Source of the DNA: Gracilinanus agilis
Lineage: Eukaryota
Reading direction: 5' to 3'
NCBI RefSeq assembly: GCF_016433145.1
Contig: NC_058134.1
Location: 286,504,959-286,568,958, forward strand
DNA: 64,000 nt
Part shown: piece after piece, positions 34,701-37,142 of the stretch
Numbering within the stretch: position 1 is the stretch's first letter
How the letters are laid out: every line of letters begins with the position of its first letter
Notes under the pieces: generated by a model
Told to the model about the DNA's origin: nothing
The model's input: only the letters and a program-made list of their open reading frames with translations
The model's database searches: none
Program-made: the position numbers and the translations under genes

Positions 34701-37005
34701 TTAGTTCCCTTGCCTGTAAAATGGGGGTGAGACCTAGTGCCTGCTTCCTTCCTGCCTGTTTGCGATGCCAACTGTGAGCCATTTTGGTGAGGTGGATCAC
34801 CCCCTCCCGCCTCCAGGGAAGAGTTTGTGTGTCCGGGTGGGAGAGGGGGGCCAAAGACCTGGAGCAGGCCTGCCCTAGCTTCTGGGGCCTCCTCCCAGTT
34901 TTCCCTGAAAAGGAAAGTTCAGCCTTTTAACTTTTCTGACTGCCTCTCCCCCTCTAGTGCTGCTGCCAGTTGCCTTGACAACGACTGTGGCAGCTGCGCA
35001 GTGGCACTGAGACAGCTGGGTGGGGGTGGGGGAGCTACCACCCCGCCGGGCCCCAGACCTAGGAGGGGAGGCCCCTCCTCTTAGCCCAGAGGGAAAGAAA
35101 GAGCTGGGGAGAGCCGGTAGGTACAGGAGGGTTAGGGCCATCCTTCCTGCCCCTCTGGGGCCTCTCCCTCTTCAAACTGAACTGAAATAAATGTCAAGCC
35201 CTCTTTCCCTGGCAAGGCAGGAGAGGGCCTGGCCACAATGCACTTAAACCCAGAGCTGGCTCTAACCCCAGCGCTCTGACCCAAACTGCCATGCTCCCGG
35301 AAATTCCAAGGTGAGTGGGGGGAGTAGGGGGGCCCTGCTGGAACCTGCCATTTCCTGGCTTGGCTCGGCTTGGCCGAGGTCGGTGGCTGCTTTTATTGGG
35401 CATTTTTTATTTCAGATAAACCACAGTTCCCCCAGAGAAGCTGAGGGAGCTTTTCCAGACCAAGGGAGAAGGAATCTGTAAATGCTCTGCATCCTCTTCC
35501 TTCCCTTCCCACCTCCTGGACCCCCAATATACAGAAACCTGGAGTTTCACTACAGGAACAATGCTGGGGGAGGGGATGTAAGGGGAGAGCAGGGCCTGTG
35601 GACTCTTTGCTGGCTGGATTTTGAAATCCCTTGAATTTTGTAGTTCCTAACTATAGCTAGAGATTACTTCTTCCTCCTCAGATTTATTTGAAATTCCTAA
35701 AAGCAGTTTCCACAGCTACCTGCCTCTCCCCTTTCCCCCATGAACTCAAGTCTTAGTGATTGTTATTCTGTCCTGAAGCATAACTCTTTAAGAGTTGACC
35801 CCTTCACTTTTCTGGAATTATCTTCTGGCCAGAAAGGAAATGGTGCTTTTCCCAGGGCACACAAAAGCGCCCCTCAAGATGACAGCGAAGCCAAAATGGA
35901 CTTTTGCCAAGAAAACCGATTCTCTTACTCCCTTAACCCAGACTGAAGGGACCATTTAACACAATTTAGATAGAAACCCCCAAATGATGATGACGACAAC
36001 GACGACCTGGCAATTCTGTTGAACACCCCCTTAAGTACATATTTCTCAGCTTAACTCAATTTCTATTTGTGTTCCTCTGGCTTATGAATGGCCTCTCTGT
36101 ATTTCTAGTTCTTCTGTTGAAGCTTCAGACTGGGGGGCTACTCTTCTTGTCTTTCTCCTTGGCTCAAGAGTCAACTTCGTTTGGGGAAGAGGAGAAGCAT
36201 CTCTCCCCAGCTGCTGTTGGTAGGGGGTTATCCTTGGGAATTACTCAACTAACCCATCATCTCCTTTAGGTTTCTGTGGGTCTAATCATTTCCCCCTGCC
36301 CACTCTCATCCTCTGTAGAAATAGGGTTGCCACAAGCAGAATTTTAAAGGGGAGACTTAGGGAGAGCTTCATTTGTGTAGGTTATGTCCCTGGGGGAACA
36401 AACTCAGCTTACATTAAGAGAGTCCCTAAAATTGTGTTGCTGAAGGGGTATGCCATTGTTCTACAATTAAGGGCCTGGTCAAAATAATTAGAGTAGGGGG
36501 GGGAAAACCTTTTTAAATGGCCGCTAAGCGTGTTTTTTTTTTTTAGAATGGCATTTTTAAACATGCAATATGGTTTAAGTTGCCCTTGGGCAGACTTTGA
36601 GGTTATTTGGTCTGTATACCATTCTTTCAGAATGGAGATTTTTCATGTCCTATTTACTTTCTTGGCTTGGATTTAGACACCAGAATAGGCAAGTGTTCAC
36701 TTCCTGAATATCAGGCACCAAGGAATGACTAGGCTGGCCTTCAGGGCTTTTTGGAACCCCTAATTTATCATTTTGGAGAAAAGAGCTTTGAGAGTAGAGT
36801 TGGTTGGAGTTGACCCATTTATTGATGGCCTTTCATAGACCTCATCTCTGAAGCTATTCCTTTAAAGACATAAGCCTCAATCATTCAGTTCCCTGGAAGC
36901 AGAGACTGACAAAGTTCAAACCCTCAGCGCGGGTCCTAACCGCCTTGCCCTTCCCATTTGCAGGAACCGGGTGGCCTTAGTCCTTCAGGTGAAACAGCGT
37001 GCGCT

Positions 37006-37142
37006 ATGGGAAAGAAAACCAAGAGAACAGCCGATAGTTCTTCGTCAGAGGATGAGGAGGAGTACGTCGTGGAGAAGGTGTTAGACAGACGCGTGGTTAA
37101 GGGGCAAGTGGAATACCTACTCAAGTGGAAAGGCTTCTCTGA
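37006..37142 (+). CDS. CBX5: CBX5 coding exon 1 (exon 2; starts 36964)
   Basis: Acceptor cccatttgcag ending 36963; donor GA|gtaagt. Confidence 0.97.

What the first reader, a model, noticed from the sequence alone, without database searches (positions are those of the whole stretch)
35291..37084. Alternative CBX5 first exon that creates a 46-aa overlapping uORF over the HP1-alpha start
Seen: a GC/G-rich patch at 34800-35420 ends in ...ctgccATGCTCCCGGAAATTCCAAG|gtgagt, a perfect donor at 35310/35311, with an ETS-type CCGGAAAT at 35297-35304. Splicing to exon 2 (36964) gives [46 protein letters not shown]. This is out of frame with HP1-alpha, runs through its ATG (37006) and stops at TAG 37082-37084, 58 nt before the next junction, just past the 50-55 nt NMD threshold. 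The uATG has G at -3. Known: human CBX5 has alternative 5' exons, one from a promoter uncoupled from HNRNPA1. Inference: promoter choice could set HP1-alpha output through leaky scanning or NMD, or yield a basic microprotein.
Basis: partly seen in the sequence, partly recalled or inferred. Interest (0 to 1): 0.75.

Follow-up and report, generated by a model that had tools for sequence, protein, structure and literature searches.

The report
Known CBX5 alternative exon, lineage-specific uORF

Summary
Every letter and number of the observation checks out: ATG 35291, donor AAG|GTGAGT 35310/35311, acceptor 36963/36964, a 46-codon out-of-frame ORF, TAG 37082-84, and 58 nt to the exon 2 end.

The exon call is supported by homology. 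Window 34889-35360 is one of six conserved islands in CBX5 intron 1, and 35294-35320 is 99% identical to four eutherians. The published human junction primer for HP1alpha transcript variant 1 matches 35296-35310 exactly. NCBI models of two rodents use the same donor. A second conserved donor at 35116 matches human variant 2 and is spliced to exon 2 in shrew RNA contigs.

The alternative first exon is therefore already known. The uATG is not conserved: all 14 eutherian loci read TCA or TTA where the window reads CAT. A different uATG (window 35238) is conserved in all 15 loci and opens a 12-13-codon uORF that ends 11 nt before ATG 35291.

The most likely reading is a minor, uATG-laden leader that translates HP1alpha poorly. 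The microprotein idea is unsupported. Interest is low to moderate. This scan had not noted the locus on other DNA before.

The parts
34890..35116 (+). Conserved promoter/exon block B, ending in the donor CCG|GTAGGT at 35116/35117. It is the orthologue of the human HP1alpha variant 2 first exon. The window has no ATG in 34766-35116.
   Evidence: 79-95% identity to four eutherians. The human V2 forward primer matches 35091-35110 with 2 mismatches. Shrew RNA contigs L014 and L016 join this donor to exon 2. ATG scan.
35191..35310 (+). V1-type alternative first exon. The 3' end at 35310 is firm. The 5' end (TSS) is unknown, so the start given is only the most upstream ATG that might be included.
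   Evidence: 35251-35310 is 82-99% identical to eutherians. tblastn of the Nannospalax isoform X1 N-terminus hits 35269-35322 at E = 6e-6, and the match breaks exactly at 35310. The exon part of the human V1 junction primer equals 35296-35310.
35238..35279 (+). Conserved uATG (context ACA ATG C) opening a 13-codon uORF that ends inside the exon, 11 nt before ATG 35291.
   Evidence: CACAATGC is present in all 15 loci, at -73 in the window and at -83 to -85 in eutherians. The uORF is 12 codons in Nannospalax, Panthera and Rousettus.
35291..35293 (+). It is lineage-specific.
   Evidence: The window reads CAT-GCT. All 14 eutherian loci read TCA-GCT or TTA-GCT. It is the only poorly conserved triplet in an otherwise near-invariant stretch.
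35294..35320 (+). 27-nt block, 99% identical to the four eutherians in alignment A1, holding the ETS-like CCGGAAAT and the 5' splice site.
   Evidence: 99% identity between the window and the four eutherians in alignment A1. The 18 nt GCTCCCGGAAATTCCAAG plus GTGAGTG are identical in all 15 loci.
35311..36963 (+). Intron between the V1-type exon and exon 2, 1653 nt long.
   Evidence: The same intron is 1528-1766 nt in three eutherians.
36964..37142 (+). CBX5 exon 2. It has a 42-nt leader with no ATG and no in-frame stop, the HP1alpha ATG at 37006, and the uORF stop TAG at 37082-37084.
20740..20833 (+). 3' part of the canonical CBX5 exon 1 at the bidirectional CpG-island promoter, with donor CGG|GTAAGT. 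It contains no ATG.
   Evidence: Aligns to bases 1-97 of bat RNA contig L001. CpG island. ATG scan.

Best explanation
Window 34890-35310 is the marsupial orthologue of the alternative promoter and first-exon module in the 3' part of CBX5 intron 1. In human this module gives the minor HP1alpha transcript variants V2 (donor equivalent to 35116) and V1 (donor equivalent to 35310).

In this lineage a three-base change (TCA to CAT) created an ATG 20 nt before the donor. Any transcript that uses the donor would therefore almost certainly carry a 46-codon, out-of-frame ORF that overlaps the HP1alpha start by 79 nt.

The likely working is as follows; all steps about translation are inferred.
- Scanning ribosomes first meet the conserved ATG at 35238 and translate its 13 codons.
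- After termination they have only 11 nt before ATG 35291. That is too short to become competent again, so they mostly pass it and can reinitiate at the HP1alpha ATG, 73 nt beyond that uORF's stop.
- Ribosomes that leak past 35238 can start at 35291 (G at -3, C at +4). These are lost to HP1alpha.

The net effect is a leader that yields less HP1alpha per mRNA than the canonical leader, which has no ATG in at least its last 136 nt. The -20 ATG is most likely a tolerated, lineage-specific addition to an already uATG-laden minor leader, not a selected switch. The peptide has no function of its own.
For: Orthology:
- Alignment of 34889-35360 to four eutherian loci gives 72-74% identity over about 520-570 nt; in Apodemus it aligns as two shorter blocks, 79-83%. 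The eutherians are 90-96% identical among themselves, and the window is the outgroup.
- The 18 nt before the donor plus GTGAGTG are identical in all 15 loci.

Use of the donor elsewhere:
- The human V1 forward RT-qPCR primer in Table S1 of PMC4721113 is these 15 exon bases plus 4 bases that are not intron, so it is a junction primer. It maps once in the window, at 35296-35310.
- The shared reverse primer maps in exon 2.
- NCBI isoform X1 models of Nannospalax and Apodemus start in this exon.
- The paper reports promoter marks and Pol II over the V1 and V2 exons and RT-qPCR detection.

Donor at 35116: shrew RNA contigs L014 and L016 use its equivalent.

uATG map.

Peptide: Pfam gives nothing for its exon 2 part.
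Against: - There is no RNA evidence from this species.
- The TATAAA that lies about 170 nt upstream of the donor in eutherians falls in a segment deleted in the window, so the promoter may be weaker or may start elsewhere.
- V1 is minor in human cells: V3 exceeds V1 plus V2 by about 20-fold to 3,500-fold, except in HeLa.
- None of the 11 eutherian RNA contigs fetched shows the V1 junction.
- The extreme conservation of the 27-nt block could reflect protein binding to DNA rather than splicing.
Confidence: 0.6

Rival explanations
1. The 46-codon overlapping uORF is a selected regulatory device, so that the choice between the CpG-island promoter and the V1 promoter sets HP1alpha output through leaky scanning and/or NMD.
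For: - The ORF geometry is exactly as stated.
- The canonical leader lacks uATGs, while the V1-type leader has three.
- The exon and its promoter block are under strong constraint.
- The uORF stop lies upstream of three exon junctions.
Against: - The uATG is absent in all 14 eutherian loci and sits in the one unconstrained triplet of the block.
- It is preceded by a conserved uATG whose uORF ends 11 nt upstream, which should lower its use.
- uATG content of this exon is labile. The rodent ATG at -60 is in frame in Nannospalax and Apodemus but opens a 4-codon ORF in hamster.
- V1 is a minor isoform in human cells.
- No paper links CBX5 to a uORF.
Confidence: 0.12
2. In this species the block works only as DNA, as an intronic enhancer or promoter-like element bound by ETS, Rel, SOX or E-box type factors. 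The donor at 35310 is not used, so neither the exon nor the uORF exists in mRNA.
For: - There is no RNA evidence here.
- The TATA-bearing segment of eutherians is deleted in the window.
- The conserved stretch around the donor, about 27 nt, is longer than the roughly 9 nt a splice site needs.
- No V1 junction appears in 11 eutherian RNA contigs.
Against: - The donor is the top-scoring GT site in the intron and is identical in all 15 loci.
- The same donor is spliced to exon 2 in human by a published junction primer and is used in NCBI models of two rodents.
- The neighbouring donor B is used in shrew RNA.
Confidence: 0.23
3. The 46-aa product is a functional basic microprotein (pI 12, 13 Arg+Lys).
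For: The composition is strongly basic. Pfam gives only a weak, sub-threshold hit, YnaL at E = 0.09.
Against: - The start codon is absent in all eutherians examined.
- 26 of the 46 codons overlap the HP1alpha coding sequence in another frame, so their composition is dictated by HP1alpha.
- No family match reaches threshold.
Confidence: 0.03

Closest known systems
Human CBX5 (HP1alpha) transcript variants V1 and V2, from autonomous promoters in the 3' part of intron 1 (Vad-Nielsen et al. 2016, PMC4721113)
   Same: - The position is the same, 1.5-1.8 kb upstream of exon 2.
- The last 15 exon bases equal the exon part of the V1 junction primer.
- The V2 primer site lies just before the second conserved donor at 35116.
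- Both exons splice to the common exon 2, which holds the HP1alpha ATG.
   Different: - The window carries an ATG at -20 that none of the 14 non-human eutherian loci has. The human sequence itself was not examined.
- The window lacks the eutherian TATAAA segment.
- The window lacks the eutherian GCCATGG uATG of the V2-type exon.
- Expression in this species is untested.
NCBI 'isoform X1' models of CBX5 in Nannospalax galili (P0135) and Apodemus sylvaticus (P0133)
   Same: Same first exon and same donor. The HP1alpha-frame translation of its last 14 codons differs at 2 residues.
   Different: In those rodents an ATG at -60 is in frame with HP1alpha and predicts a 34-residue N-terminal extension in Nannospalax; the Apodemus model is irregular. 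The window has a stop (TAA 35263-65) in that frame and an out-of-frame ATG instead.
Overlapping upstream ORFs in alternative 5' leaders, the generic class of translational dampers
   Same: An out-of-frame uATG in a moderate context, terminating inside the main coding sequence, which precludes reinitiation at the main ATG.
   Different: There is no evidence of translation, no conservation of the start codon, and a short conserved uORF immediately upstream that may shield it.

Membership tests
CBX5 V1 alternative first exon | Lies in the 3' part of intron 1, upstream of the ATG-bearing exon 2 | tested here: met
   The donor at 35310 is 1653 nt upstream of exon 2. The same intron is 1528-1766 nt in eutherians. 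The paper places V1 and V2 in the 3' region of intron 1.
CBX5 V1 alternative first exon | The 3' end of the exon is orthologous to the sequence spliced to exon 2 in human V1 | tested here: met
   The 15 exon bases of the published V1 junction primer match 35296-35310 exactly and uniquely.
CBX5 V1 alternative first exon | Spliced to exon 2 in RNA of this species | not testable with these tools
Exact ORF look-ups found nothing.
CBX5 V1 alternative first exon | Own transcription start with promoter marks | not testable with these tools
   No CAGE or ChIP data were available. The upstream block is conserved, but the eutherian TATA segment is deleted in the window.
Overlapping uORF (translational repressor) | uATG lies inside the mature leader | tested here: inconclusive
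   The ATG is only 20 nt from the donor, and the rodent models need the exon to extend at least 60 nt upstream. The TSS in this species is unknown.
Overlapping uORF (translational repressor) | Out of frame and terminating downstream of the main ATG | tested here: met
   46 codons, with a stop at 37082-84 and a 79-nt overlap with the coding sequence.
Overlapping uORF (translational repressor) | Start codon conserved among related species | tested here: not met
   Absent in all 14 eutherian loci. No other marsupial could be reached.
Overlapping uORF (translational repressor) | Ribosome initiation at the uATG | not testable with these tools
   No Ribo-seq data were accessible.
NMD substrate by the 50-55 nt rule | Termination more than 50-55 nt upstream of an exon junction | tested here: met
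   The stop is 58 nt from the exon 2/3 junction. The exon 3/4 and 4/5 junctions lie further downstream (exon map), so the 58-nt margin is not critical.
NMD substrate by the 50-55 nt rule | UPF1-dependent transcript instability | not testable with these tools
   This needs an experiment.
Conserved micropeptide | ORF and peptide conserved across species, or a recognisable domain | tested here: not met
   The start codon is absent elsewhere. Pfam gives no hit above threshold.

The most novel reading that the evidence does not exclude
In the opossum lineage, and perhaps in marsupials generally, the acquired overlapping uORF makes V1-promoter transcripts nearly silent for HP1alpha. Switching between the CpG-island promoter and the intronic V1 promoter would then tune HP1alpha dosage at the translational level. 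The conserved 12-13-codon uORF upstream would act as a gate that decides how many ribosomes see the -20 ATG.
Probability: 0.1. Interest if true: 0.4.

Novelty: new member of a known kind. Interest (0 to 1): 0.22.

Why it matters
HP1alpha dosage matters for heterochromatin and is altered in cancer, and how CBX5 is uncoupled from its bidirectional partner HNRNPA1 is an open question. This work shows three things.

- The V1/V2 alternative promoter module predates the marsupial-eutherian split.
- Both splice donors of the module are kept almost letter for letter.
- The V1 leader carries a conserved short uORF in every mammal examined.

The particular 46-codon uORF in the finding is a lineage-specific addition. 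It is at most a local modifier of a minor isoform.

Tried and rejected
No junction, TSS or expression data were obtained for this species.
2. Exact look-ups of window ORFs, meant to reach contigs of the same or sister species, found nothing on record. The queries were 3' UTR ORF 53131-53652 and five ORFs around the exon and the last exon.
3. The species' own 191-aa HP1alpha and the 46-aa spliced peptide have no single reference. Only the exon 2 part of the uORF (36965-37081) and the last-exon ORF were searched by reference.
4. Other N-terminally extended CBX5 proteins turned out to be irrelevant:
   - P0021, P0123 and P0124 are ORFs that read through the intron-exon 2 boundary.
   - P0012 is a TTG-start call on a bat transcript carrying the STET-type cassette exon.
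   - Panthera X1 uses a separate predicted exon about 300 nt upstream of exon 2, and Rousettus X1 starts at about the canonical exon 1.
5. Hamster RNA contigs and some shrew RNA contigs showed canonical, unidentified or chimeric 5' ends and no V1 junction.
6. A literature search for a CBX5 uORF found nothing relevant.
7. The CpG-island promoter idea for the patch was rejected, because its CpG observed/expected ratio is 0.12-0.19.
8. The transposable-element idea was rejected, because the patch is single-copy in the window and conserved at the same position relative to exon 2.

No contig taken for human was fetched or compared. The only human letters used were the published 19-20-nt primers of Table S1. 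The N runs were left untouched.

Full report
**Observation**

The letters are as described, and a script reproduced every number.
- ATG at 35291, in context GCC ATG C.
- CCGGAAAT at 35297-35304.
- Donor AAG|GTGAGT at 35310/35311.
- Acceptor at 36963/36964, and the HP1alpha ATG at 37006.
- A 46-codon out-of-frame ORF ending at TAG 37082-37084, 58 nt before the end of exon 2 (37142).

By a rough position-weight score, the donor ranks first of 884 GT sites on the + strand of CBX5 intron 1. The patch is GC-rich but CpG-poor, with an observed/expected ratio of 0.12-0.19. The only CpG island is 19500-21500, between HNRNPA1 (- strand, ATG near 20044) and CBX5 exon 1.

**Window map**
- NFE2 last exon: 9114-10148 (+).
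- HNRNPA1: about 13-20 kb (-).
- CBX5 (+): exon 1 ends at 20833; exon 2 is 36964-37142; exon 3 about 41919-42104; exon 4 about 46518-46619; the last coding exon ends at 50146.

**What it is**

A word search with the last-exon ORF returned CBX5 proteins, and cluster listing added N-terminally extended 'isoform X1' models. The Nannospalax model (P0135) and the Apodemus model (P0133) begin with 20 residues that end ...CSAPGNSK, followed by exon 2. tblastn places residues 7-24 of P0135 on window 35269-35322 (E = 6e-6). The match breaks exactly at 35310.

I fetched genomic loci of Nannospalax, Apodemus, Panthera and Rousettus.
- Window 34889-35360 aligns to a block that lies at the same distance from exon 2. 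Identity is 72-74% over about 520-570 nt; in Apodemus it aligns as two shorter blocks at 79-83%.
- Only six such islands, 16% of the intron, align between the window and the bat locus.
- The eutherians are 90-96% identical to each other across the block, and the window is the clear outgroup at 71-77%.
I did not verify the species independently.

The block has two conserved parts, each ending in a conserved donor.
- 34890-35116 ends in CCG|GTAGGT.
- 35251-35310 ends in AAG|GTGAGT. Here 35294-35320 is 99% identical to the four eutherians.

**Link to the known human transcripts**

Vad-Nielsen et al. 2016 (PMC4721113) describe two minor HP1alpha-coding variants, V1 and V2. Both start from autonomous promoters in the 3' part of the 20-kb intron 1. 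The paper reports H3K4me3, H3K27ac and Pol II over their first exons. V3 exceeds V1 plus V2 by about 20-fold to 3,500-fold, except in HeLa.

Their primer table ties these variants to the window.
- The V1 forward primer has 15 bases that equal window 35296-35310 exactly and uniquely. Its last 4 bases are not the intron's, so it is a junction primer.
- The V2 forward primer maps at 35091-35110 with 2 mismatches, just before the 35116 donor.
- The shared reverse primer maps in exon 2.

Independent RNA support for the module comes from two shrew RNA contigs from different runs (L014, L016). Both join the 35116-type donor to exon 2. None of the 11 eutherian RNA contigs fetched carries the V1 junction, in keeping with a minor isoform.

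**The uATG**

I compared 14 eutherian loci from four rounds of look-ups.
- The 18 bases before the donor, plus GTGAGTG, are identical to the window in all of them.
- The triplet just upstream reads TCA (TTA in the Suncus locus L011) where the window reads CAT. None of them has the -20 ATG.
- This triplet is the only poorly conserved spot in the stretch.
- By contrast, the ATG in CACAATGC is present in all 15 loci, at 35238 (-73) in the window and at -83 to -85 in eutherians.
- That ATG opens a 12-13-codon uORF ending inside the exon. In the window it stops at 35277-79, 11 nt before ATG 35291.

Other uATGs come and go.
- An ATG at -60 is in frame with HP1alpha in Nannospalax and Apodemus, which explains their 'isoform X1' models. 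In hamster it opens only 4 codons.
- The window has a TAA in the HP1alpha frame at 35263-65.
- The V2-type exon carries a GCCATGG uATG with a 36-codon uORF in three eutherians checked. The window has no ATG there.
- The canonical leader has no ATG in its last 94 nt, nor in the 42-nt leader of exon 2.

**Mechanism (inferred, not shown)**

If the donor is used, the exon almost certainly includes ATG 35291. A first exon under 20 nt is implausible, and the rodent models need the exon to reach at least 60 nt upstream.
- Ribosomes that translate the conserved short uORF have 11 nt before ATG 35291. They should mostly bypass it and can reinitiate at the HP1alpha ATG, 73 nt beyond that uORF's stop.
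- Ribosomes that leak past 35238 can start at 35291 (G at -3, C at +4). Because that ORF ends 79 nt inside the coding sequence, they are lost for HP1alpha.

The V1-type leader should therefore give less HP1alpha per mRNA than the canonical leader.

NMD is possible. However, the 58-nt margin is not special, because two further exon junctions lie downstream of the stop.

The peptide is basic (pI 12), but its start codon is absent in the eutherians compared. 26 of its 46 codons are dictated by the overlapping HP1alpha frame, and Pfam finds nothing above threshold.

**Caveats**
Nothing is known about splicing, TSS or expression in this species.
- The eutherian TATAAA about 170 nt upstream of the donor lies in a segment deleted in the window.
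- Attempts to reach the same or sister species by exact ORF look-up failed.
- The spliced 46-aa peptide and the joined 191-aa protein were not searched, because a spliced model has no reference.
- No contig taken for human was fetched. Only the published primers were compared.

**Verdict**

The alternative first exon is real by orthology and already known in human. The overlapping uORF is a correct reading of this sequence, but it rests on a lineage-specific start codon in a minor leader that already carries a conserved uORF. I rate it as a new member of a known kind, of low to moderate interest.

Noticed in passing
window 24303-24387 (conserved block 24194-24566): This is the orthologue of the human STET exon of CBX5 intron 1. 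In bat RNA contig L001 it is included as an internal cassette between exon 1 and exon 2, with 90.6% identity over 85 nt. The window has a donor TCT|GTGAGC at 24387/24388, and about 17 of 20 bases of the human STET reverse-primer site at 24441-24460 (compared by eye).
   Followed up: partly
window 29056-29445, 30532-30964, 32113-32787, 35893-36195: Four further islands in CBX5 intron 1 are conserved with eutherians, with identities of 66% to 85% over 300-690 nt. The 32113-32787 island holds a strong donor, CTG|GTGAGT, at 32344. Their functions are unknown.
   Followed up: no
window 36964-37005: In the window and the four eutherians whose exon 2 was read, the 42-nt leader of exon 2 has no stop in the HP1alpha frame (EPGGLSPSG...). 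Gene predictors therefore produce various N-terminally extended 'isoform X1' proteins, depending on which upstream exon supplies an in-frame ATG: 206 aa in Rousettus, 225 aa in Nannospalax and 227 aa in Panthera.
   Followed up: partly
window 34975-34990 versus L002, L004, L005: The three eutherians checked (Nannospalax, Panthera, Rousettus) carry a strong-context uATG (GCCATGG) in the V2-type exon, with a 36-codon uORF. The window reads GCCTTGA and has no ATG anywhere in 34766-35116.
   Followed up: partly
window 35150-35160 versus alignment A1 columns 30-48: A 19-nt segment holding TATAAA is conserved in four eutherians, about 170 nt upstream of the V1 donor. It is missing in the window. An AAATAAAT at 35186-35193 is the nearest TATA-like motif.
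   Followed up: no
window 35294-35320: 27 nt around the V1 donor are 99% identical to four eutherians (the 25-nt core is identical in all 15 loci), far more than a 5' splice site needs. The stretch contains overlapping ETS-like (CCGGAAAT) and Rel-like (GGAAATTCC) motifs.
   Followed up: no
L003 about 4830-4845 (Apodemus sylvaticus, GCA_947179515.1): Exon 2 has an extra A in the A-run right after the HP1alpha ATG. This shifts the frame and explains the odd NCBI model P0133. It may be an assembly error or a real variant.
   Followed up: no
L015, L018, L021, L025: These Logan RNA contigs have CBX5 coding sequence fused to unrelated 5' sequence. In two it is antisense HNRNPA1. In the other two the upstream sequence was not identified. 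They are probably assembly chimeras.
   Followed up: no
window 15782-16003, 16025-16171, 17568-17758: Runs of N lie inside HNRNPA1.
   Followed up: no
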